Shown: positions 1 through 62,600 of the stretch, in pieces
How positions within the stretch are numbered: the first letter of the stretch is position 1
Layout: the number at the start of each line of letters is the position of its first letter
From: Asterias rubens
Taxonomy: Eukaryota
DNA: 64,000 bases
Reading direction: 5' to 3'
Assembly: GCF_902459465.1 (NCBI RefSeq)
Contig: NC_047073.1
Span: 14,756,001 to 14,820,000, forward strand
The notes under the pieces: model-generated
What the model was told of the DNA's origin: nothing
The model's database searches: none
What the model saw: only the letters and a program-made list of their open reading frames with translations
Made by a program: the position numbers and the translations under genes

Positions 1-730
1 GAACAAACTCTACCTGGCAAGTAGAAACACACATGGTGTTACCGCAAACCAAATATATATTGATACCTCACCATGCAATGCCTAAATTCTTTTGTACCCT
101 TTTCACTGATGAAAGAGGTTTCTAAAAAAATAATTGCCTTGTTAGTGATTTCCAATCCATGTTTAGTTTCACCTCACATGTAGGTACTTGTGAAATTTGT
201 GTGTAATTTCTTTTCCCAAAAGACTTTGATGCTTTATTATTTTGTCGTTAACAAGACAAATAGTTAATTATTTTCTGCAAATTATTTATTATGACCCATC
301 AAAATGAACTAGGCATATCTGAGCTTTTAAGGAACTGGTGGTTCTCAAATGTAATACTGTAAAAAATTAACTATGCCTAGTGATCAAATGCACACAAAAC
401 GTGCAACTACACAGCTGATGTAAATTTGTCCGATATTTGTCGTTTATTTTAGGTTGCGTAGAGAACCCTACTGAAGTACTTTCGACGAGCAGTAGCGTCT
501 AGACAAACAGTAAGTACAGTCTTTCTTATGATTTTTCTCCTGTAGATGATCAGCGTATATTAATAGAAACATGAGTCTTTAACCAATAGTTCTTTTCCGA
601 ACCAACACTACTCATAAAGAGATTCACATAGTGTTATCGCAAAATGTTCTTATAGTTACAATTCCACCGTACAAAGTTTCAAATCCTACTAATGGTGGCA
701 TGGTGGGCATCAAATAGGTGGGGGTGGGGG

Positions 731-790
731 GGGGGGTGACAAGGGGAGGGGGGGTGACAAGGGGAGGGGGGGTGACAAGGGGAGGGGGGC
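731..790 (+). repeat. G-rich 18-bp tandem repeat (GGGGGGTGACAAGGGGAG) x3
   Basis: Read directly; preceded by a poly-G run. Confidence 0.85.
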
Positions 791-1368
791 ACAATATCAA
801 ATGTCCCCCCATCTTTTTGACCACCTTAATCATGAAGCCCAAGTATTGCACTGTGTAAGACCAACCCTGTGTCTCGCCATGGGCATTAATCCTGGGGGCT
901 ATAAGGATGACACAACTTTTTAGAAGGGTGGGGGACACTATATCAAATGTCCCCCCTCAAAATTTACCAAAGATTGCACCACAGAGCATCTAAAATGCAG
1001 AATTTTCCCGTGCCTATATCCGCTTAGGGCTTAGATGAAGTGTCATTTTTAGTAACAATACAAAGTATGAGAATACTAGTGAATTCTTTTTTTAAACCCT
1101 GACTTGCAGCTGCCCCCAAGCCGGTTTCCAATGCATCAGCTTTCTACAGTAGAGGGCGCCAGATTGCTGGTTACTCTGCCACGGATGCATTGCTACAATC
1201 AAGGTGAGTTTATTGGTTTTTTTTTAAAGTGGGGCCTTAAAAAAACATGGTGTTTTTTATATGGCATTAGTTCTATTTGTCCTCACAACCTGATGTTGAT
1301 TTCTTTAGAGCACAACAACTTTTTTTTAATTCGGGAGACTTCTCTACTACCTCAGATTAGATTCTCTG

Positions 1369-1568
1369 AATGGACCCTACCCATGAAATATGCTAATTAC
1401 ATTCATGCATGCGTACAGACCCTGTTGGTTGCAGACGCGCAATCGCGTCTGCGTCACGCACCCATTAGCCATTTAAAAAAACAGCGCGATGCTCCCTCAT
1501 TTTGCCAACCAAAACGTTAGTGCGCACGCGCTATGTGCAATTTACATATTTCATGGAAAGGGTCTATT
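1369..1568. mobile_element. MITE, about 200 bp, about 30-bp TIRs; related copy in opposite orientation at 14194-14419
   Basis: AATGGACCCTACCCATGAAATATG ... CATATTTCATGGAAAGGGTCTATT; the interior matches the reverse complement of 14194-14419. Confidence 0.85.
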
Positions 1569-1944
1569 GGGGAGACTTCTCAGTTCTGAAAAGAACTGTC
1601 CTGCTTCTTAAATACTACCTAGGCAGAAGGTAGGAAATCTACCTAGCAAGTAGATACGCATGTTGTTATCGCTAACATTGATACCTAGGTTATTGATACC
1701 CCACCGTGCAATGCCTCAAGTCCCATATTCTTAATGTTGTTTGTCCCCTCAGGCAAACCAACTCTAACGTCACGGTAAAGCGTACCCCTGGATTCCTGAG
1801 CGTCTCTAACTCAAAGAGGTTGTACCCGATCACAAGCTACCCGGCTGGAGGCAGAAGAGCATCCCCACAGCAGTCAAAGACGTCTCAGATCAGTCTTCAA
1901 GGGTAGGTCATTCACACACTTAAAAAAAAAAGTATTATTATTAC

Positions 1945-2117
1945 TTTTTTACCCTTTCACCGATGTGTGTTAGCACTGTATACTCAGTACTTTGCCGATT
2001 GCTGTGGAAAAATATCACCAGCATGTTACTCGGGTGGGATTCGAACCCACAACCCTTGCAATTCTAGAGCAGTGTCTTACCAATAAGACTACCGTGACTG
2101 CCAGTAGCTAGAGGCAG
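1945..2117 (-). mobile_element. tRNA-derived SINE; full + strand copy at about 61528-61705, fragments near 9200, 30010 and 63950
   Basis: A-box-like TAGTCTAGTTGGTAAGA and B-box GGTTCGAATCCC head, followed by a shared non-tRNA body. Confidence 0.8.
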
Positions 2118-2484
2118 TTTGAATCCTATGTTTTGGCAGCGGGTACCACAACGATATAATAGATGTTAACATAGGATTCGAACTGCCAATACGGGTACTG
2201 CATTAATATTCTTTAATTCTTTAATGTAACATTACCATCTATAACAATAATAACATTAATTAGTTTTTATCTCAAACTGCTCCACATACCTTGCAGAAAA
2301 AAACAAAATAAAATGAGTGCTTTGATATGCCCCTAAGTAATGGTGTGCTAAAGCTCTATGTAAGATGAGTATTATTATTAAATGATAAGTCAGCTGGTCC
2401 TGCTTGCTGGTCTCTCTTCAAAAGTTAGTTGTGGGCGAATCCTGATAAAGTGACGTTCACATTATTTGTTTCCCTTGTTACCAG

Positions 2485-5400
2485 GCAACAGCCAGAGCAG
2501 TCAAGTGCAGTGACAAGCCACTTGGAGGCATTCAACTCATCGTCTGCGGAGACTTTCTTCAACTCCCACCGGTCACTAAGACTGGTGAGAAACGGGTATT
2601 CTGCTTCCAGGTAACACTCATTGATCATGTTTTCTTCTGATTTGGACTTTCCATGAAAGTGGAAATTTTTGCATGATTTGTATTCTACTGGTGCTCGATC
2701 ACAATCCACTCCTCTGGCTGGTAGCCGTGATGTTTTTTAAATCTGTCCTTAAGACTAATATCTTTTTAAAGAAGCTTTTTATTGATTGTGCATATATTAT
2801 TAAATGTTTTTACGCTGAAGTGGATTTCATATATTGTTCCTTCCTGTGCATATATTGTTCCTTTACTAATTTATTTGGGTTTATTGTCTTAATGTTTTGC
2901 AATTTTTACTCTACGGATTGTTCTGTAAGGTTCTTGTATTTTCATTTGTTTGGATTGCTGTATATTTTCCTGTTGTAAAATTTTTAATATTTTTTTAATT
3001 ATTTTGTTATGCGCTTGTGTACATTTTATGGAATGGGCGCAATACAAATGAATAAATTATTATTATAATAATAATAATTTTTATTATTTCAGGAAAGCTC
3101 TAAAGACTCGTTTCTTTGACTCCTAATTTTGTTCTCCTTATTTTTGCTGTTCTATTATTCTACTTGTTAAAGCACTGTACTAAACAGCTTTGTAAGAGCA
3201 TCATATAAACGCTTTTATCATTTTGAATTGCATTGTATTGTATCAAATTGTTGATTGTATTGCTTTGCATTGTATTGCATTGTATGGTATTGTATTGCAT
3301 CACATTGTATTGTATTAATTGTTTTGCATTGCATTGTATTGTAATGTAGGTCTATTCTAGTTGTATTCTATTCTTACAACCACTTTAAAATCCTTTAAAC
3401 ATAGTCTGTATTTTCTTTCTGCAGTCGGCAGCATGGACTCAGTGCATCCAGCTTACAATGGAACTCACTCAAGTCAAACGCCAAGATGATCCCGTCTTCA
3501 TCAATATCTTGCAGAATATACGCATTGGAAGGTAACAAATCTGTCATGTGCACTATATCAAGATTATCAGAATCGAAAAACTTCATTGAAATACGGACAA
3601 GCACTTTCATTTTAACGGTAACAGTTATTTTCGCAACAAGTGAAAAACAAGTAAAATAAATTTCAACTAAAATTTTCTTTGAACTGTAGATGTCCACAGG
3701 AGCTATGTGATCGTCTGACTGCTACGGCCAATCACATCATCGATCGGGATGGTATCCTAGCAACTAGGCTGTGTACCCACAAACAGGACGTTGACCTCTT
3801 GAATCAGGTTCACCTCAAGAAACTGACCGGTAAGAAAAGCTAATGTGATTTACTGTAAGGTGTCATGGACGAGTGGTTTAGAGTGTCCAATTCAAGATCT
3901 ATTGGTTAAGTCCTCGGAGTGTAGGTTTTGAATCATGGTTTCTCATTGGGTCCTTGAGCAAGATTCTATGCTATAATTGCTTTTCTTCATGACTGCACCC
4001 AGTGTACCTGCGAGGGTAAACGTTAATTTTGTGCATTGAAAAGCCACTGTGAGCTGCTGAAATGTCATGGCAGCTCAGGGCTGTATACAGTCACCCCAGG
4101 GAGCTGTTTTATGAGTAAGATTTAAAGGAACACGTTGCCTTGGATCGGTCGAGTTGGTCTTTGAAAAGCGTCCTGTAACCGTTTGTTATAAAATTGATAT
4201 GGTTAGAAAGATGTTGTAAAAGTAGAATACAATGTACTACACAAATATGCCTCGAAATTGCGTGGTTTTACATCGTCGGCTAACACAGTCGGCCATTTAG
4301 TGGAGTCAAAACTTTTACTCCCATAATTGGCCGACCGTGTTAGTTCGCGACGTAAAATGAAAACGTGCAATTTTGAGTGATACTTAGTGTGGATCATTAT
4401 ATTTTACTTTTAAAACATCTTTCTAACCACATGCATTTCATAACAAACGGTTTCAAATTTTCATAGACCAACTCGTCCGATCCAAGGCAACGTGTTCCTT
4501 TAACGTATGTCACGTTCATCGGATTCAAATTTTGGGGAATAAAAACTTATGTATTTTTCCATAACCATGTTACTTCGAGGTGAACTGGTTCTTGAAATGC
4601 TTCATAATATTGAAAGCTGCTTTGTAGGTTTAAAAACCAAATGCTTTTAATTGATATTTTAAGAGTGATTACCAAATGTATATTTTCCTTTTGAACATGT
4701 TGAAGGCACTAGACAATGACTGGTAATGACTCAAATTATACAATACATAAAAAGTTACTTCATAAACGAACAATGGAGAGCTGCCGATAGTATAAAACAT
4801 TGTAAGAAACGACTCCCTTTGAAGTAACACAGATTTTGAGAAAGTGGTAATTTCTCACTAAAACATTTGAATCTAGGAAAGACTTTAGGCCTGCCATGTA
4901 GTAAGAACACATATTTGTGCAACAAGGGTGTTTTTCTTTTTTTGATTGTTTTCTGGCAATTTCGATGACCAATTTAGCCCAAATTTTTCATCTGGATTTG
5001 TTATTTTATACATCAATGTTGGGATACTGAGAATATCTTTGACAAAACTACCAACTTTGTCCAACTGATGCTTTTTAACTTTAACAGGAGATCCTAGAGT
5101 GTTTGATGCCTGGGACAGCGACCCCAACCTAGTGAGTATTATCAACAGTCAGTGTCCAGTCCCTAGGAGTCTTGAGCTTAGGGTTGGAGCCCAGGTCATG
5201 CTGGCCAAGAATCTTGACGTACAGCAGGGTCTGGTCAACGGAGCTAGAGGGGTGGTAACAGGGTTCGGCGCAGGGGAAACTGGTAAGCTTAAACTAATAT
5301 AAAAAAACGGATCCTGGAAAAGTTTGTCCCTTGCAAAAGATCGTTGTTTTATGTTGTGAAGTGTGTTTGGTATGTCAGTACTGTAGGGTAGAAGACGAAG

Positions 5401-8205
5401 AATTCCCCCAACCCATATTGTTTTGTGTATGTATTAGGATGTCATGGCCGAGTGGTTAAGAGCATTGAATTGGTTAAGTCATCCAGATGTTGGTTCGAGT
5501 CCCGGTCATGACACTTGTGTCCTTGAGCAAGATCAGGCCTCTAGGCCTATGCTTCGTTTTTAAAAGGCAAGGGCACCGAGGCATTTTCTCCTTGGTATAT
5601 AAATGGGCACCCTATGAGGAAATTGTAAACCTCTACAGGAGCATTCCAAGGTCACCAAGGCAATGACCAGGGGGCACGGAGGCAAATGCCTTCGTTGCCT
5701 CCGTGAAGTTTCAAGCCTGCAAGATGCCTTCAAATACTATAATTGCTTCTCTTCACCCAGGGTGATAAATGGGTTCCTGTGAGGGTAGAGGTTAACTTTG
5801 TGTTTGAAAAAGCCTTCAGAGTGCCAAGCTGAGAAAGATAACAAAGAATGTTGTTGGCCAAATGACCAGTCAGTCGATTTCGAGAAACGCTAGGATTAAT
5901 CCTATCTCGATTTAGGACGAGTAACCTGTCCTAACTTAGGATGGGTTCAATGCATCCTCGGAACATATTTGGATACGGAACTGAACTTGTCTTGTAAGTT
6001 AGGAGGAGTTTGGTGAAATCATCGGCAGGGCACTAGTGCAAAGCTGATGGCAACCCTTTTGCCAAATCGCTATGAATGAACTAGTTTGTATTACAAAATT
6101 TATTTGCTATTGTAAATTGTACCATATTAGTTGTACACGTGTATAAATTTGCTTTCCAAAATGGCAAGCATGGCTGCAGTTGAGAAACGTGCCATTGGTC
6201 CAAAGCGAATGAATTAATACATTAACCCTTTGTATTTGCAGGCCTACCCATAGTGAAGTTTATGTGCGGCGTTGAGCAGGCCATACGGATGGAACGTTGG
6301 CCGATACGAGCCGGTGCTGGTCTGGTACTCAGCCGTCGGCAACTCCCTCTCAAGTTGGCCTGGGCAATATCAATTCACAAAAGCCAGGTGAGATACTCAG
6401 TTTTCTAACATTCCAGTTGCACAACTCTGGGCCCAAATTCATAGAGCTGTTTTAGCCGCAAGAAGTAGATGCACATCAAAATTGGCTTGCCAAAATAATG
6501 TTACCAGCCAAAATACCCTGTCCCGTGTACAGTTTGTGACTGGTATTCTGCTTATTTCTGCTTAGCAGAAATATTTTTTTCTTCAGTGGCTCTTTGAAAT
6601 TGGGCCCGGTGTTCATTAGTATTCTTTATTGCCATGTCACACGAGGCAATTTACAGGCAACCAGTTCGCAGGCAATCTCCAAGAAGAAAAGGCATTCATA
6701 TCATTCTAATGTTCACATATTATTCTTTGGGATCGTATTAAAAAAGACAATGTTTATAAACAAATTACTCAGTGCTACTAATGTGTTCACTGTGGAATGC
6801 ACTGCAGTTGGTTGCCTCCAAGTTGCCTGTGAAAAGTTGCCTTGTGTGGCAAGGTCCTTGCGTTATAAAAGTATGATGAGTGCTTTCCAGTTTCCTGTGG
6901 CTTTTTTTTATTTTTTTCAATTTTTTTAACACATTTTGTATTCTTGCATTATAAAAATTGAGTGCTTTACATTTTTAATTTTTTCTCGTGGCTTGTGTTG
7001 TTGTTCCACATATTCATTGCACTTTGGGTGATTTGATCCCTTCTCCCTTTTGCAGCCTTATCTTAGATTGTTTTTTAAAAGATGTGTTAAATGCTTTTAT
7101 ACAATCTATTGTTGTGCCTTTTGACTGGTTTGCATTGCAATTGTATTTTATTATGTAAATTGTATCAATTGTGCTTTAAATGTTGTTATGTTTGATTGTT
7201 ATGTATTACTTGATCTGTTCTTGTCCCTTTTCTGAACAATCATTTTCTGTGATTGCTCGTGCCAGAAATGTTTACCCATATTTTTCAGTGTCAACTTGAA
7301 AATTTTTTATTACTTTGTTCTTCTTTGATATTTAGTTTTTACCTACACTGATCAATGTGTGTAAAGCACTGTCTAGTACTTAAAATGACATTTGGCTTTC
7401 TAGAGCAGTTGTCTGAACACTAGACCATCGTGCTTGCCCTATAGCTAGAGGCAGTTCGAATCCTATATTAGATTTGTGTTGATATATTTTACTAAAATAT
7501 TATATATTGAATATTCTCATTTTGCTTGATTACGTCTTTGGTGCACTGCATTTATTTTTCTTTAAATTTTGTATTGATTTTAATTGACACTTTTATTATT
7601 CCAAAATTAGAAACATACCACTATAACCTAAGGGAGCCTAGGGTAAAAATAATGTACATACGTTTTAAGATAATCGTTTTATTAGTACATACATATTGAT
7701 TGCTTTTATGGTAATTGCTTAGTAAGATTTGAAACTTTGCAAGGTAGTAGTATTAGGTGAGGGTTGCGGTAGCGCCATGTGTAAATCTCTCCAATGAGTA
7801 GTGTTGTTGGTTCTAGACAGAACCAAAGGTTGGCAACTGTTTTACTTACAAGTGCGTAGGCCTAATGGTTAATTGCTATAACACTCTCAATGAAATCTCA
7901 TACTCATATCAGTTATCATTGTTTTGTATTTAACTGTATTTCAATACTTTCGCTCACAGGGAATGTCCTTAGACTGTGTGGAAATCTCGCTCGCTCGTGT
8001 CTTCGAGTGCGGCCAAGCCTACGTGGCTTTATCCCGAGCCCGTAATCTAGAGGGCCTACGCGTCGTTGATTTTGATCGGGCCTGCGTGCGCGCCCATCCG
8101 GACGTCGTCAAGTTCCATCACGTCTTGCGGAGGCAGCAGCGCATGATGCAGACTGAGATCGAAGACTACACACAAGATAAGGAAAACATCAGGCCGTATC
8201 TTTAG
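2485..8205 (+). CDS. PIF1: ATP-dependent DNA helicase PIF1, 3' six coding exons (5' part not in window)
   Basis: Exons 2485-2610, 3425-3531, 3690-3829, 5088-5282, 6242-6387 and 7960-8205 are all GT-AG and frame-consistent. Motifs: [87 protein letters not shown]-terminal DKEN. AATAAA at 8293-8298. Confidence 0.95.
3223..3350. repeat. Degenerate (TTGTA/TTGCA)n microsatellite
   Basis: Read directly. Confidence 0.8.
4126..4499. mobile_element. TTAA-flanked non-autonomous DNA transposon (Kolobok-like), family B; second copy about 22291-22738
   Basis: TTAA|AGGAACACGTTGCCTTGGATCGG ... CCGATCCAAGGCAACGTGTTCCT|TTAA. A TTAA target with AG..CT ends fits the Kolobok superfamily. Confidence 0.85.
5438..5790 (+). 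mobile_element. tRNA-headed SINE split by a nested 186-bp element; related copies at about 3860-4020, 11150-11310, 33070-33200 and 35850-36150
   Basis: tRNA-like head, then GTGTCCTTGAGCAAG...CTTCACCCAGG...ATAAATGGGT core shared among the copies. Confidence 0.75.
5534..5719. mobile_element. Short CAGG...CCTG element with 6-bp TSD (hAT-like); relatives at about 11770-11890 and 14864-15030
   Basis: CAAGAT at 5528-5533 and 5720-5725 flanks the insert. Confidence 0.7.
6429..6607. mobile_element. MITE with GGGCCCAA(A/T)TTCA...TGAAATTGGGCCC ends; further copies at about 50570-51155, 55770-56072 and 61150-61340
   Basis: Terminal inverted repeats and a shared GCTTAGCA-rich interior. Confidence 0.7.
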
Positions 8206-10381
8206 CAGGGATTAGTATATCAGGTTTTTATCTGAATTACAAGATTTTGAGTCAACCTGATAAAGAAAATCAGCTGTTACTTTCCACGTAGAAATAAATG
8301 CTGCTCTTCCATCTAGTGCTGAAGACACTGTTCATAAAACCTCTGTGAAATCTAAACTCCAGGGGTAACCAAAATGTGGAAATGTCGTTTTGAACAACCT
8401 CATAACATTTGGGTCCTAGATTCAAACTTTTTGTTGTTGTCAGCAATGACTCTCACCCTTGTCGTAGGAAAGCAGCTGTAAAGTGCTTTATCCATGGCAC
8501 CCAGTTTGATTAACCAGAAAATAGTCGATCAGCAAGACTTAGCAAGAAACCGGTTGTGTGGAGTGTACATTTATAGTGCATTATGAGTGGTTGCCAGATT
8601 ACTATGCAAAAACCCTCTGTGTGCTAAATACATGTATCGTGCAAAGCAACCTCAATGGATGAGAAATATCAGAAATTAAAAAAAAAAATTCTCTGCCAAG
8701 TGACAAAAAAGCTAAATTACTTTTTTCAGAAAAAAAAAAGATCATGCTCTTAAAATTATTTTTCTAGCGCTGAGGATAGACGTACTGTTGCTGATAGCTC
8801 CTTGAAATCCGTTGTTAAGTTGTGGAAATGCAATCATTTCCAAAGACCTGCAATGTTGGTCTGAGTGTCGGTACTTTTTCGTCAGCTAATGACTTTCGTC
8901 CCTGGTTCAATGCTTACCGAGGCCTGACGCTTAACGGGGAGGCAATTGCCTCCATGCCCCGGTCGTCATTGTTGATTTCACAGTTGTGTACGATTTTCAA
9001 GTCCAAGGTGTGGTCACAGATTCTTTCGATCCCAAATCTTTACAGCGTGCCACTCTACATTTAAGTCTAGCAATGACTCACTACTTGCAAAGTTTTTAAA
9101 ATGTCGTTTAAAATCTATTTATTGACGTCTATGTATACATATAGAGTTTATTAGCTATAATTACTGTTAAAACTGTTTAACCTAAGTCATTCTTAAATAT
9201 TTGTGTTTTACCCTTCATCAATGTGTGCTAAACACTGTTTACTCGGTACTTTCCTCCCCGAGTCCTGGGGACAGAAATTTCACAGACCTTTTCCTGTGAA
9301 CAATTTCAACCAGATCATGTTTTAATGCTAAATTAAAAATAAAAATTAATGAGTACCTGCCTTCATGGTTTTGATTTGCTTGATTATTAAATTTCTATTG
9401 AAAATATAAATTTATCGATATAATTGCTTATTTCCCCCCACCCCCAAGACTCGGTTGGTTGAGTTTGGTATAAAATAGCGAAAACTAATGCCTAGTAAAC
9501 AAACAAATTAATGTTACAATACATTAAATCTAGAAGGGTCTTTGACGATTTCCTTACAAAATGTCCTTACAAAAGACTAGTCTAGTTGTGTACACATTCC
9601 AGTGCCTTTCCGGCAGGCAAGATGCTACACTGGTCATTTGGGAAATTTAAAGTTTGTGTCATCATTTCTGCATAAATTGAAGACTTGACAATACAACAGC
9701 TGAACAGGCTTTAAGATTTGCCCCCTTGATTCACATAACAAGTTGATAGAAATCAGATTTGTGCAGTCGTTCCTGCAGGAAGTCCAGGCTCTGTGACTCT
9801 TTTGTAACAAAGTTATGCCACAGGGTACCAGACCATGTTCCCCACACCGCCCTATTTTTTACCTTCTGCCCCCCCCCCCCCCCCACTTCCCAAAGGCACT
9901 TTAGTTTCCAAGTTTCTGACTACTGTATTATTGTGGCATTTTTTGTATCCAAATTGGCCAAGTCAGGAGCATGGAGTTGCAAATGAAAACGGCCAACTCA
10001 CTTCAGATACTGCATAATCTTTTGTTACTCTACAATGTATTAGTTTTTTTCCTGTTTGTTTTCTAAGTCATCGTGGGAGTTGGGAACTACATGGGTAAGG
10101 TGTCGACCAACTCTCAACATCTTGGGCCTAATCTTCTTAATAATAGTAGTGGCTTCTTATATAGCGCGCATAACCGTCACTCAGTGGTGCTTTAATTTTC
10201 CTGAAATGTATGTGGGACTACGCTTGAATTGTGGGACCTACTCCTTTTTACATCTTGTGTGCTTTATTCTAAGTCGTTATGAAGTTGAGAACCAAACCAG
10301 CCAACTCACTCGCAAATCTCAACCATAATCTTCTCGTACAGGGTTTTCATCTTGTTTATAAATGTGGTGTGAATCTCATCC

Positions 10382-22990: not shown

Positions 22991-23409
22991 GCATGCCTGC
23001 TTCTCGAACACGTTGTAGCCGCGTCCTTCTTAGCTGCGAGTAAGGACGATTAGCCCCCCAAATTATTATTTATTATTAAATCGGCTGTTAAATGGAAGGG
23101 ATTAAAGTTAATCCAAAGGATTGTAAATAGGGACCAAACCATTTTTAGATTTAAAATTATAATTGAACTCATTGTTCCTGTATTTTGAACGATCCAACGG
23201 AACGCACGCGGAACGCTGGTCGGTCTCATTCTTCGTGAGCTCGATCAATATTGAATTATCTATCTACCATTTCTGTGTGGAGCTGTATTTATGGTAGTTT
23301 GTCATCGTCGTATGGCCACTAACGCCGTCAAGTTCAGAGGCGACGTAACACCGAGGGAATACTATAATACTTCTCTGCTACTTTAGACAAGATTGCTTTT
23401 TGAGCCATC

Positions 23410-24009
23410 ATGTCATTATCGATTCGCTGTCTGCACACTCGACCGGACCTGATCGTCTCGTGCTCAAATCTGTTGAAAAGCGTCTGGCCCTGTTCCAGGA
23501 TTGAGCGTCTGCAGCATTTGGAGAACGAGAACTGCACTGGGTTCCCGTGTTCGTTAGTTCTCATTGACCATGGAGAGAACCGGCCAGATTCCGTAATCGG
23601 ACATTTCCGGATTGTTCCGGTAAAGTTCCCGATTCAACCGAATAGCGTGTATCTTGAGGCAGGTTGTGTAGACAAATCCAGACAATTGGAGGGATTGTAC
23701 AAACAAATGCTGAATTTTGCCGACAAATATGCGTTTGAAACCTTGGAGTGTCAACAGATCTTTGCGTGGATTTTAAAGAATTCGATCACGTTTTTCAAAC
23801 GTGGAGGATTTGTTGAATGCCCCGACTTTACGGTCCGAGCAGTTGGAGCTAATGCACTGGAACCATTTGGCACCCCGAGGTTTTGGACCAAAGACACACC
23901 GCCCCCTGATAACTTGAAGTTCGCCCCTGATGGTTTCATCATTACGAAGGACGCCTTGCTGAACACGGTCATGATGAAGAAAACGTTTCGAACCAAGATG
24001 GAACTTTGA
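23410..24009 (+). CDS. NAA80: NAA80-like GNAT N-acetyltransferase copy 2, intronless, 199 aa
   Basis: Open ORF with good start context (ATCATGT); LHTRPDLIVSC, WP, FPCSLVLID, VIGHFR and terminal VMMKK motifs. Confidence 0.85.
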   Translation: MSLSIRCLHTRPDLIVSCSNLLKSVWPCSRIERLQHLENENCTGFPCSLVLIDHGENRPDSVIGHFRIVPVKFPIQPNSVYLEAGCVDKSRQLEGLYKQMLNFADKYAFETLECQQIFAWILKNSITFFKRGGFVECPDFTVRAVGANALEPFGTPRFWTKDTPPPDNLKFAPDGFIITKDALLNTVMMKKTFRTKMEL

Positions 24010-24735
24010 CATGCTTGGTTTTGTACTTGCAGCCCCCCCCCCGCCCCCAACAGAAACAATACATTCTAGCTGTGAGTGACGTACATTAAATACCAGTCTG
24101 GTGTTGTTTACAGTGGTTGTTTGTTTGCTTTTATATTACTCATCTCGGCCTGTATTCGAGAAAATGTTAACGTTGAGTTTTCTTAAGGAGTGCACTGGCT
24201 TAACAAGAAAATTGTGCACTTTTTGAGAAAAGCATGACAATTCTAGGATACTTAGGTTAGACCATAAGATACATTTTTAGATGTGGAGGGAAGTCAGATT
24301 TGACATATGATGACCTTGAGAGGTCAAAATCCAAAATGGCCGCCAATCTGCCTGGTCTAATGTTAAAACACGCTTAGATTTTGCATGAAGGTCAAGGTCA
24401 AGGTCGAATTAGGTAAACATGAGAGTGTTTTTTTTTTTATTACTTTGCCTCCGTTTTAACACTTAAGGAGTCATTATAAAAAAAATTAAGACCCATGGAT
24501 GTTAAACCTAACCACCACTTTGACTATCAAGGGCCCAATTTCACGCACGAGTTTCTACTTAATAGTGCTATACATGTACATGAAAATGCATGCTAAACCT
24601 TCTGTTGCTTTAATATTGCACAAAAATAATGAAAATACCAGTGCAAATCGATTGCGTACGTACGCGCTAGTTGGTTAAACCTCCTTAAAGTTTAAGCTCC
24701 TCACCACGTGGAACAAAAATACAAAACAAATTAAT

Positions 24736-31629: not shown

Positions 31630-44041
<12,412 letters not shown>

Positions 44042-59683: not shown

Positions 59684-62600
59684 ATGAACCGCATGATGTC
59701 TCTTCACTGCGTGTTTCGAGCAACTGCCGTTCTCCTCTTGTCAGTTCTGTCAACATTCCCAATTGTGGTGTCTGCTTTAGATGGTAAATATTTATTAAAA
59801 TACATAGATTGCAAAACAAAAGTTTTGACCCTAGCAGAGTCTTTCTCGAAGGCTAAATGACAACACAAAAAAAATCAGGTAACGCAACATAAGCAGTGAA
59901 TTGGAAATAAATTAATAGAGAGAGAGAGTCGGAAAGCACACAGAAAAAAGTAAGAGGTAAACAATGAAAAGGGAGACGAGAAAGCCTCTTCTAGAGGTGA
60001 AATGTCAGGCCATTAGGCCAAGTAAAAAAGGAAACAAGTTTAGCGTCACCACCCGCTTCCTTTTCACAGGCCGCCTCCTTTTTAATTTTTTTATGCACAT
60101 TTTTTATGCACATTTTTTTATTATTTTGTTTTGTTTGTTAAATAGGGTTATTTTAAATGATCTCAGCAAAAACAATCTGAATGTCTTGTCTGAATGCCTC
60201 GACTAAATTGTTTCATTTATGTTTTATGTATTTCAGCAGTAGAAAAAACATTGGATATTAATTTGACATTTTAACAAAGAATGGCGGCCATCTTGAAATA
60301 AAAAATAAAAAATATAATGCCCCTCTTCCTCCTTTTTTGAAAAACCCGGACCTGAAACATGTTTTTTTTACTCGCCTTAGCCTAGAAATATTTTTTCTTA
60401 AATTTATACCATACAAGGTCATTTTGGGTTGGTAAGCAGTTTGCAATTCAGCTAATTCTATTTTCTTATTTACATATTATGTCTTAAATGATTTGAATTG
60501 AACAAAGAACAATTTACTAAAGCGGGGTTTGAACCAACAACCTTTGGATTAACTTGCAGGCATTTTACCAACTGAGCTATCTAGCCTTATGTTGGCAGTC
60601 TCCTTTTTATTGATAAAAAACAAGGGAGACTGCGGACATAGGGCAGAAGGGCCAGATAGCTCTGTTGGAGGAGCATGTTAGTCCAGAGGTCGTTGGTTCA
60701 AATCATGCTCTAGTCAATTTTGTCTCTGTTCAACCCATATAATTTTCCCAGTCAGTTTCCCTTGTGGTTTATTATTTATTTATTTGGTAATTGCTCCAAC
60801 GGTTAATGATCAATGTTCTTCGGAGCACTGGATGGTGAGCTTTTGTTTATTAAGAATCATTGGTAAAAAGGACACCCTTTGAGGTTATTTTTGCACCCAA
60901 AAAAACTTTGAATCTAAGAAAAGCGAGAGGCTTTCATAATTCAAAAATCAGTTATTAAATGTCAAAGTTCTTTGTCTGTCTTCCCTCATCAGTGTGATCT
61001 GGAATCTCAATTACTTTTTTGTACATTTAATATAATCATATTGGCACTTTTTAGGTGTAAAGACATTTGGGATCTTTCAACTCCAATTTGAAGGGATTGC
61101 ATATATTTACCTTATTTTAATTTAATATCATCATTGGAAAGATCCGATCTTTCTTGATAAAAACAGGATTACCAACCAAATTTCCACTTGTTGCATATTG
61201 CTTGTTACTGGTATTCAGCTGTTGTTTGCATATCCTGATAATCACGTGGAAATTTGGTTGGTAATCCTGTTTTTATCCAGGAAGAAATTTCATGCTAAGC
61301 AAATTTTTGTGCTTAGCAGCTCTATGAAATTGGGCCCTGGTAATTAAGCTTGGGTATGGAGGGTGAACATGGACAAAAATACGATGGCCCTTGTGCTCAG
61401 GCTTGAGTGCTTTTTGTGTGTAAGCTTAATATTAAAGAGGTTAAGCTGTGGCTAAAATCAAGTAACTTTTGATACATTAGATGTTAAATTTGCATCGGGG
61501 ATAAAGAATATTAATTTTTTTGCCTCTAGCTGCCGGGCAACCTCGGTAGTCTAGTTGGTAAGACACTGCTCTAGAATTGCAAGGGTCGTGGGTTCGAATC
61601 CCACCCGAGTAACATGCCTGTGATATTTTTTTCACAGGACTCGGGAAAGTACTGAGTATACAGTGCTAACACACATCGGTGTATGGGTAAAAACCAAAAT
61701 TAATACTTTGATACATTGTTAGTAATAAAATTATGTCTTCTTTTAAACAGGTTATGTGGAGCCAGGGAGAAGTGGAGAACCTGTGTTGGTTGAACAGGGT
61801 ACCGACCTACACCTGAACTGCACCCTAAGCAATGTGACGCAGCCTGGCGACCAAACGGCCGCGGACATAGTGTGGTACCGAGGCTCACAAGCTGTCCCTA
61901 CAGACTGTTACTCCGCAATCAGTGAGAGTGTGTCGCAGCTTTCGTTGATGAATGTCACGTTTGATCAGAGCTCTTCCTATTCGTGCGGCTTCCCAGAGGA
62001 TGGTATTTTAATGAAGATTTGGGTTGAAGTTTTAGTTGGAAGTAAGTGATGAAAAATATTCTTGAAAAAAATCTATGTAACGTGCCCCTGGTGGCAGTTG
62101 ATTAAAAGACCCTGGACTCTATTGGTAATTGTCAAAGACCAGTCCACTTGGTGTAACTCAACAAATCTGTGAAAGTTTTAGCTCAATTGGTTGTCCAAGT
62201 TGCGAGATAATAATGAAAGAAAAAAACACCTTGCCACACGAAGTTGTGTGATTTCAGATGCTTGATTTCGAGACCTCAAATTCTAAATCTGAGGTCTCGT
62301 AATCAAATTTGCGAAAAATTACTTCTTTTTCGAAAACTACGTCACTTCAGGGATTTCTCACAATGTTTTATACTATCAACCTCTCCCCATTACTCGTTAC
62401 CAAGTAAGGTTTTGTGCTAATAATTATTTTGAGTAATTACCAATAGTGTCCACTGTTGCAATATGCATAAAGTTGTTTATTGACCTTTGACCTTTCGTGT
62501 GTTGCATTAAACGTTTCCGGGTGTTAGCTTAAACCAGTGACTAGTGTCTACAATCTTGTGTACCTAAAATCATTGTTTACTAACTAAAGTATGAAGCATA

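What the first reader, a model, noticed from the sequence alone, without database searches (positions are those of the whole stretch)
453..2610. USP37-like exons sit where the Walker-B exon of PIF1 should be: chimera, intronic gene fragment or misjoin
Seen: the first PIF1 exon in the window (2485) starts at motif III, yet the splice-flanked exons upstream (1110-1203, 1753-1902, perhaps 453-509) encode an S/T/Q-rich chain ending SLQG, not PIF1 motifs I/II. Established (recalled): this chain resembles the USP37 linker immediately before the Cys box (FYGSR, KRSLGFL, LQG-FSNLGNTCY), and I saw no Cys-box exon in the next 62 kb. Seen: three AGs lie at the PIF1 exon start (ending 2484, 2491, 2495), and splicing 1902 to 2496 is in frame ([17 protein letters not shown]). 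The TAG-containing 57-nt exon is phase-symmetric and so skippable. A SINE lies in the junction intron (1945-2117). Inference: this could be a USP37 N-terminus fused to the PIF1 C-terminal half, a decaying USP37 fragment inside a PIF1 intron, or an assembly join.
Basis: partly seen in the sequence, partly recalled or inferred. Interest (0 to 1): 0.75.

Follow-up and report, generated by a model that had tools for sequence, protein, structure and literature searches.

The report
USP37 gene fragment beside starfish PIF1
The "foreign" exons just upstream of the PIF1 helicase exon are one cut-short copy of a large, recently duplicated stretch of starfish DNA. That stretch carries a piece of a USP37-type deubiquitinase gene, and the available RNA splices PIF1 straight past it, so this is an ordinary gene fragment, not a fusion protein.

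Summary
Exons 1110-1203 and 1753-1902 are real, spliced, USP-derived exons. Exon 2485-2610 is PIF1 motif III. 1902->2485 is out of frame and 1902->2496 is in frame. A tRNA-derived SINE lies between them, and the window has no Cys-box exon. The 57-nt "exon" 453-509 has no support.

Window 1-2276 is one copy of a multi-kb low-copy repeat in Asterias rubens. Two other copies, on LR699103.1 and LR699100.1, differ by under 1% in substitutions. They run 1.17 kb further and there hold the USP Cys-box exon (FSNLGNTCYMNAILQ...). NCBI names one of them "ubiquitin carboxyl-terminal hydrolase 37-like".

The window copy stops sharply at 2276|2277, 208 bp before the PIF1 exon, so it lacks the catalytic exon.

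RNA contigs that join the two USP exons continue into sequence absent from window 1-6000. A PIF1 mRNA contig joins 2485 directly to about 1 kb of upstream mRNA that lies outside the window.

Best reading (0.68): an inert USP37 gene fragment inside, or bounding, a PIF1 intron. No fusion transcript was seen. A misjoin inside the repeat is not excluded. I could not locate the PIF1 5' exons or the intact USP37 gene. Ordinary; low interest.

The parts
1..2276 (+). Right-hand end of one copy of a low-copy repeat that carries an internal piece of a USP37-like gene. The copy runs off the window's left edge.
   Evidence: It aligns over 2.28 kb to L001 26673-28891 and L002 8932-11153 at 96.4-96.6% identity with gaps counted. 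Only 26 substitutions fall in 2208 aligned sites across the three copies. The homology stops sharply at 2276.
453..509 (+).
   Evidence: It has stops in all three frames. RNA contigs cross it unspliced. It is absent from the NCBI models P0001 and P0002. It is unrelated to the KEN-box exon of L001.
1110..1203 (+). USP37-like linker exon B (APKPVSNASAFYSRGRQIAGYSATDALLQS).
   Evidence: An RNA joint links it to exon C (X5 record 21). It matches P0001 and P0002 at 100% protein identity. It is near-identical in L001 and L002.
1753..1902 (+). USP37-like linker exon C (...KTSQISLQG), the last exon before the Cys box in the paralogous copies.
   Evidence: RNA contigs in four runs cover it. phmmer gives P0001 at E 1e-12 and P0002 at E 6e-7. 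In L001 and L002 the Cys-box exon follows it.
1876..1878 (+). AAA run where L001, L002 and all four RNA runs have AA. The extra base is private to the window, and it is what makes 1902->2496 in frame.
   Evidence: (alignment) and table 4 (one base left out at 1876 in X1, X2, X5 and X3).
1929..2117 (-). tRNA-derived SINE inside the repeat.
   Evidence: Rfam tRNA at 2029-2096 on the minus strand, 39.3 bits, E 4e-6. Copies lie at window 61521-61709 and in L001. RNA contig depth there is very high.
2249..2276 (.). Last 28 bp of the repeat copy. One RNA-library contig matches the window only from 2249 rightwards and has other DNA to its left.
   Evidence: table 7 (X1, place 2249, 255 loose letters before it) and (breakpoint sequences). 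Reading this as a short shared stretch at the junction is inference.
2277..2484 (+). Unique sequence: the 3' end of the PIF1 intron that precedes the motif III exon.
   Evidence: It has no homology to L001 or L002, nor elsewhere in the window.
2485..2610 (+). PIF1 exon with motif III ([17 protein letters not shown]).
   Evidence: Pfam PIF1 positions 126-162 of 223, E 5e-9. The RNA contig X3 record 18 enters it at 2483/2485 from 1031 nt of mRNA that lies outside window 1-6000.
3425..8205 (+). The remaining PIF1 exons: 3425-3531, 3690-3829, 5088-5282, 6242-6387 and 7960-8205 (with stop). Together with 2485-2610 they give an open 319-aa C-terminal half.
   Evidence: Splice-consistent model. RNA contig pieces lie at 3422-3529, 3688-3828 and 5087-5283. 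Pfam Pif1_2B_dom scores E 4e-17 on 5087-5281. Five of the 7 listed differences from a relative's mRNA are synonymous.

Best explanation
Window 1-2276 is the right-hand end of one copy of a large low-copy repeat (a segmental duplication) in the Asterias rubens genome. The repeat carries an internal piece of a USP37-type deubiquitinase gene. In the fullest copy seen (L001) that piece comprises a KEN-motif exon, a long satellite-filled intron, two linker exons (B and C here) and the Cys-box exon.

The window's copy is cut off 374 bp after exon C. It therefore has no catalytic exon and cannot make a deubiquitinase. The cut end lies 208 bp upstream of the PIF1 motif III exon, so the fragment most likely sits inside the PIF1 intron between the motif II and motif III exons. 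PIF1 pre-mRNA is spliced across it. If B and C were included, the PIF1 frame would hit a stop in exon C.

Shown: the repeat, its sharp end, the USP identity of the exon that follows in the paralogues, the B-C splice, and a PIF1 mRNA that skips B and C. Inferred: that the PIF1 5' exons lie upstream of the repeat in this genome, and that an intact USP37 gene exists elsewhere and supplies the long RNA contig.
For: Repeat: window 1-2276 matches L001 and L002, two other A. rubens loci fetched from records LR699103.1 and LR699100.1. Only 26 substitutions fall in 2208 sites among the three copies. The break at 2276|2277 is sharp, while L001 and L002 stay alike for 1172 bp more.

USP identity: the exon after C reads FSNLGNTCYMNAILQSLFCLECF... 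at L001 29191-29319. It matches Pfam UCH at E 7.7e-7, and all 93 PDB matches are USPs. NCBI names are 'ubiquitin carboxyl-terminal hydrolase 37-like' (P0002) and LOC117297949 (P0001). The position fits the human USP37 layout of PH domain, linker and Cys350 (PMC8579576).

Fragment status: the window has no Cys box, QNDAHEF motif or His box. L001 and L002 have no further USP-domain motif (QNDAHEF, His box) in the 10 kb after their Cys-box exon.

RNA: X5 record 21 (814 nt) joins B to C, then runs 487 nt that lie nowhere in window 1-6000. X3 record 16 (2574 nt) has 2278 nt after exon C that also lie elsewhere. X3 record 18 (2113 nt, PIF1) has 1031 nt upstream of 2483 outside the window, then 2483-2607, 3422-3529, 3688-3828 and 5087-5283.

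PIF1 is under constraint here. The 319-aa C-terminal half is open, and 5 of the 7 listed differences from the relative's mRNA are synonymous. Including B and C in the PIF1 frame gives a stop (BCD frame 0).
Against: I could not see upstream of the window, so it is not shown that PIF1 exons with motifs I and II lie beyond the repeat in this genome.

The RNA runs are coded. They may come from relatives, and one is a marine metatranscriptome, so they do not show how this individual's copy is spliced.

Only the best-supported joints were printed (186 were not shown), so a rare 1902->2485/2496 joint could have been missed.

The window copy keeps B and C open in one frame, thanks to a private extra A at 1876-1878, which is not what simple decay predicts.

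Copies that differ by under 1% are hard to assemble, so the long-range path through the repeat may be wrong.
Confidence: 0.68

Rival explanations
1. Assembly artefact or haplotype-specific structural variant. The path through a repeat whose copies differ by under 1% was mis-threaded, or the junction exists on only one haplotype. In that case the reference arrangement (USP37 fragment directly upstream of PIF1 exon D) is not the normal gene structure.
For: The copies differ by only 0.7-0.9% in substitutions over 2.2 kb and share satellites, which is difficult for long-read assemblers. One contig in X1 matches the window from 2249 rightwards but has 255 unrelated letters to its left (table 7), so another left flank for this PIF1 intron exists somewhere. 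Many of the differences between copies are homopolymer indels.
Against: The break at 2276|2277 lies in unique, non-satellite sequence with no N gap, and at most 28 bp are shared there. That is too short for an overlap-based misjoin. A repeat-to-unique boundary has to be spanned by real reads to be assembled at all. The X1 contig may come from another species or carry a transposon insertion.
Confidence: 0.15
2. A true rearrangement has separated the PIF1 3' half from its 5' exons. The repeat copy marks a breakpoint rather than an intronic insertion, and the PIF1 part in the window is an orphaned or duplicated half-gene.
For: No Walker A/B exon lies in the window. The scan's notes on the 26 kb upstream mention a satellite and a PAXX-like gene but no helicase exons.
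Against: The six PIF1 exons are open with canonical splice sites. Differences from a relative's PIF1 mRNA are mostly synonymous, as expected for the functional orthologue. That mRNA joins exon D to about 1 kb of upstream mRNA. Absence of a note is not absence of exons.
Confidence: 0.08
3. A real chimeric gene. Transcription through the USP37-like exons is spliced from 1902 to the minor acceptor at 2495|2496, giving a USP37-linker/PIF1 C-terminal fusion protein.
For: 1902->2496 is in frame ([17 protein letters not shown]) and B and C have strong splice sites. The private extra A at 1876-1878 is what puts this copy in frame.
Against: No such joint appears among the contigs shown. All three spliced contigs that carry exon C continue outside window 1-6000. 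The acceptor seen in RNA is 2484|2485, which is out of frame with exon C. The product would lack the PIF1 Walker A/B motifs and every USP catalytic residue. A search of 1.84 billion representative proteins with exon C found no chimeric product.
Confidence: 0.05

Closest known systems
USP37 (ubiquitin carboxyl-terminal hydrolase 37; human protein of 979 aa with N-terminal PH domain, linker, catalytic Cys350 and His906)
   Same: The chain sits directly N-terminal to a canonical USP Cys box in the paralogous copies (…SLQG|FSNLGNTCYMNAILQ). A KEN motif lies in the preceding exon of L001. NCBI's pipeline names one copy 'USP37-like'.
   Different: The window copy has no Cys box, no His box and no PH-domain exon. 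It is a two-exon fragment. I did not test the linker's similarity to a bona fide USP37 directly, because no full-length USP37 sequence could be fetched.
Segmental duplications / low-copy repeats carrying partial genes (duplicated, unprocessed pseudogene fragments)
   Same: There are at least three copies at separate places in the assembly, fetched from two different sequence records, each multi-kb and under 1% diverged in substitutions. Introns and satellites were copied along with the exons. The copies end at different points and carry frame-breaking indels (12-nt deletion, 5-nt insertion, 1-2-nt indels).
   Different: In L001 the 22.4-kb unit is followed head-to-tail by the start of a second unit, and L002 ends at the same base. 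Such a precisely shared end is more typical of a defined unit than of random duplication breakpoints.
PIF1 family 5'-3' DNA helicase (metazoan PIF1)
   Same: Motifs III-VI and the 2B domain are encoded by six intact exons at 2485-8205, and these match a relative's PIF1 mRNA.
   Different: The exons for motifs I, Ia and II are not in the window. Their place directly upstream is taken by the USP37-fragment repeat.
Cryptic 'poison' cassette exons in introns
   Same: B and C have strong splice sites, lie on the sense strand of a PIF1 intron, and would bring in a premature stop if included.
   Different: No PIF1 transcript that includes them was seen. This is a possible side effect, not a shown function.

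Membership tests
USP deubiquitinase (Pfam UCH, PF00443) | Cys box with the catalytic cysteine (NLGNTCY) | tested here: not met
   None in any frame of the 64-kb window. It is present only in the paralogous copies: L001 29191-29319 (UCH E 7.7e-7) and L002, where it is broken by a 5-nt insertion.
USP deubiquitinase (Pfam UCH, PF00443) | QNDAHEF motif and His box (GHY) | tested here: not met
   Regex over six frames of the window, L001 and L002 found no credible match.
USP37 specifically | N-terminal PH-like domain (UCH_N) upstream of the linker | not testable with these tools
   The upstream exons would lie outside the window. In L001 nothing recognisable lies between the unit's left end (7645) and the KEN exon.
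USP37 specifically | Linker sequence similar to that of bona fide USP37 orthologues | tested here: inconclusive
   The only support is NCBI's automatic name for P0002. There was no PDB match and no Pfam match for the linker. The length filter kept full-length USP37 out of reach, and the representative search found only the two fragments.
PIF1 helicase | Motifs III-VI and the 2B domain | tested here: met
   Pfam PIF1 positions 126-162 of 223 and Pif1_2B_dom at E 4e-17. YVALSRAR lies in the last exon, and the 319-aa model is open.
PIF1 helicase | Walker A (motif I) and Walker B (motif II) | tested here: not met
   Absent from the window. A relative's mRNA carries 1031 nt upstream of exon D that lie outside the window.
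Segmental duplication / low-copy repeat | Two or more copies longer than 1 kb and over 90% identical at separate loci | tested here: met
   Three loci. Identity is 96.4-96.8% with gaps counted, over 2.3-8.5 kb, and over 99% counting substitutions only.
Transposable element | Terminal repeats, target-site duplication, or a transposase, RT or Rep ORF | tested here: not met
   The ends seen carry no TIR and the unit has no TE-type ORF. Only one shared right end and one head-to-tail junction were seen.
Chimeric (fusion) gene | A transcript joining exons of both parents in frame | tested here: not met
   No contig joins 1902 to 2485 or 2496. Contigs with exon C and the PIF1 contig are separate. The data are limited, because only part of the joint table was shown and the runs may come from relatives.

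The most novel reading that the evidence does not exclude
The 22-kb unit is not a passive duplication. It would be a defined DNA unit that copies itself, for example through a circular or rolling-circle-type intermediate, and carries USP37 exons to new chromosomes. Its landing in PIF1 would then have created, through a private 1-nt insertion, an in-frame USP37-linker/PIF1 chimeric reading frame used at low level.
Probability: 0.05. Interest if true: 0.6.

Novelty: new member of a known kind. Interest (0 to 1): 0.22.

Why it matters
The main value is for annotation and assembly quality. It explains why USP37-like exons appear where a PIF1 exon is expected, and it warns against calling a USP37-PIF1 fusion. 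It also flags a family of near-identical multi-kb repeats, found at three or more places in the A. rubens assembly, that can mislead assemblers and gene callers. NCBI already lists two of the fragments as genes.

Biologically it is a modest example of young duplicated gene pieces as raw material for exon shuffling, and of strong ectopic splice sites dropped into an intron of a replication helicase gene.

Tried and rejected
- The 57-nt 'exon' 453-509 was rejected. It has stops in all frames, no spliced RNA, no place in the NCBI models, and no relation to the KEN exon.
- A Cys box or other USP exons further along the window: none found.
- L001 or L002 as the intact USP37 gene was rejected. Neither has further USP exons within 10 kb. 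L002's Cys-box exon is frameshifted, and L001's exon C is frameshifted relative to its Cys box.
- The satellite as an amplified KEN exon was rejected.
- A transposon reading of the unit has no support from TIRs or ORFs.
- A Helitron-type PIF1 was rejected. This PIF1 has introns, a metazoan C-terminus, and a spliced mRNA carrying about 1 kb 5' of exon D.
- Attempts to fetch a full-length USP37 or the A. rubens PIF1 protein failed. The length filter of the search for homologous proteins excludes them for any query I could give by reference. PDB holds no USP37 match. The Atlas gave only a generic UCH result.
- Earlier notes of this scan mention neither USP37 nor PIF1.
Full report
**What is at the coordinates.**
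- Exon B (1110-1203, 94 nt) and exon C (1753-1902, 150 nt) have good acceptors and GT donors.
- In one frame they read APKPVSNASAFYSRGRQIAGYSATDALLQSR-QTNSNVTVKRTPGFLSVSNSKRLYPITSYPAGGRRASPQQSKTSQISLQ(G), ending in phase 2.
- Exon D (2485-2610) reads [30 protein letters not shown]... It matches Pfam PIF1 at profile positions 126-162 of 223 (E 5e-9), so the first 125 positions of the domain, which hold motifs I to II, must be encoded elsewhere.
- Splicing 1902->2485 is out of frame and 1902->2496 is in frame.
- No Cys-box, QNDAHEF, His-box or Walker A/B motif occurs in any frame of the 64 kb.
- The SINE is real. Rfam tRNA scores 39.3 bits at 2029-2096 on the minus strand, other copies exist, and RNA contig depth over it is very high.
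- The 57-nt 'exon' 453-509 has stops in every frame, is crossed unspliced by RNA contigs, and is not used in any gene model.

**The exons are real and USP-derived.** A phmmer scan of 1.84 billion representative proteins with exon C found two short Asterias rubens proteins. P0001 is NCBI 'uncharacterized protein LOC117297949'. P0002 is NCBI 'ubiquitin carboxyl-terminal hydrolase 37-like'. Their loci, L001 (LR699103.1) and L002 (LR699100.1), come from assembly GCA_902459465.3. Earlier notes of this scan describe this genome as the common starfish.

In both loci exon C is followed about 670 bp later by an exon reading FSNLGNTCYMNAILQSLFCLECFTADMQNQDIIPLMQKSSLYW. That exon matches Pfam UCH (E 7.7e-7, above the curated cut-off), and all 93 of its PDB matches are USP catalytic domains.

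In L001 a further exon 17.6 kb upstream encodes ...FQEKQLLLEERKEN. The order of linker then Cys box fits the human USP37 layout of PH domain, linker and Cys350 (PMC8579576).

The '37' rests on NCBI's automatic name only. I could not fetch a full-length USP37 to compare.

**The exons belong to a repeat that ends just before PIF1.**
- Window 1-2276 aligns end to end with L001 26673-28891 and L002 8932-11153.
- Counting substitutions only, the three copies differ at 26 of 2208 sites. Most of the 3.5% BLAST difference is indels.
- L001 and L002 are alike over at least 8.5 kb, plus shared satellites. A neighbouring note of this scan places a satellite 5.6-13 kb upstream of the window. That matches the L001 layout, so the window's copy very probably extends at least 13 kb to the left.
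- Homology with the window stops between 2276 and 2277. L001 and L002 continue together for 1172 bp more, through the Cys-box exon, to a common end at L001 30063 and L002 12318.
- The window copy is therefore cut short and has lost the catalytic exon. Bases 2277-2484 are unique and lead into PIF1 exon D.
- Neither L001 nor L002 is an intact gene. No further USP-domain motif turns up within 10 kb downstream. L002 has a 5-nt insertion right after the Cys codon. L001 has a 12-nt deletion and a frame-breaking 1-nt difference in exon C.
- The window has a private extra A (AAA at 1876-1878, against AA in both paralogues and in all four RNA runs). This extra base keeps its B-C frame open, and it is the reason 1902->2496 is in frame.

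**RNA evidence (Logan contigs of four RNA runs).**
- X5 record 21 (814 nt) joins B to C. It has 86 nt before and 487 nt after that lie nowhere in window 1-6000.
- X3 record 16 (2574 nt) has exon C at its positions 145-296, followed by 2278 nt that lie elsewhere.
- X2 record 11 behaves the same way.
- Transcripts containing these exons therefore run on into other sequence, presumably the Cys-box exon and the rest of a USP37 mRNA, and not into PIF1.
- X3 record 18 (2113 nt) is a PIF1 mRNA. Its first 1031 nt lie outside the window. It then covers 2483-2607, 3422-3529, 3688-3828 and 5087-5283. This confirms the 2484|2485 acceptor and shows that B and C are skipped.

Caveats: the runs are coded and may be close relatives. 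Only the best-supported joints were printed. No DNA reads were laid across the junction.

**PIF1 itself looks healthy.** Six exons (2485-2610, 3425-3531, 3690-3829, 5088-5282, 6242-6387, 7960-8205) give an open 319-aa C-terminal half with the 2B domain and motif VI. Five of the 7 listed differences from the relative's mRNA are synonymous third-position changes.

If B and C were included in PIF1 mRNA, the frame would stop inside exon C. At most they are potential poison exons.

**Verdict.** The best reading is an inert, cut-short copy of a young low-copy repeat carrying a USP37 gene fragment, lying in or bounding the PIF1 intron before the motif III exon (0.68).

A mis-threaded assembly path or a haplotype-specific variant remains possible (0.15). 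The copies are nearly identical, and one contig in X1 has different DNA left of 2249. Against this, the junction lies in unique sequence and has no gap.

A true break of PIF1 (0.08) and a real fusion gene (0.05) are less likely.

I could not see upstream of the window, so the position of the PIF1 5' exons and of the intact USP37 gene remains open. The finding is ordinary.

Noticed in passing
L001:7645-30790: A 22.4-kb unit (7645-30063) is followed head-to-tail by a second copy of its first ~600 bp (30064-30649 matches 7645-8237 at 96%). L002 ends the shared block at exactly the same base (12318). The unit has no TIRs and no transposase-like ORFs. This could be a tandem duplication or a defined copying unit.
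   Followed up: partly
L001:10513-24379: Between the KEN exon and exon B lie 5.4 kb of a 12-bp microsatellite, about 5 kb of a roughly 330-bp satellite (15967-21177) and a 59-bp VNTR (21600-24379). L002 shares them. They probably correspond to the satellite noted 5.6 kb upstream of the window.
   Followed up: partly
window:2249: One contig of the marine metatranscriptome run X1 matches the window from 2249 rightwards but carries 255 unrelated letters to the left (…GATTAGAATATGG). This is an alternative left flank for this PIF1 intron in another allele or species.
   Followed up: no
window:2521: The window's PIF1 has Leu in KPLGGIQ where the relative's mRNA has Phe (C>T at 2521).
   Followed up: no
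window:726-789: A G-rich 18-bp tandem repeat (GGGAGGGGGGGTGACAAG, 3.6 copies) lies inside the repeat copy. Its copy number differs between the three copies and accounts for part of the indel difference.
   Followed up: no
window:31500-43200 (minus strand): A long run of SRCR-domain exons (…GRVE…WGTVCDD.WD…A.V.CRQLG…) forms a multi-SRCR gene. An assembly gap (N) lies at 43377-43534.
   Followed up: no
window:4000-5000 and 5400-6000: RNA contig depth is very high over PIF1 intronic repeats, indicating abundant transposon families.
   Followed up: no
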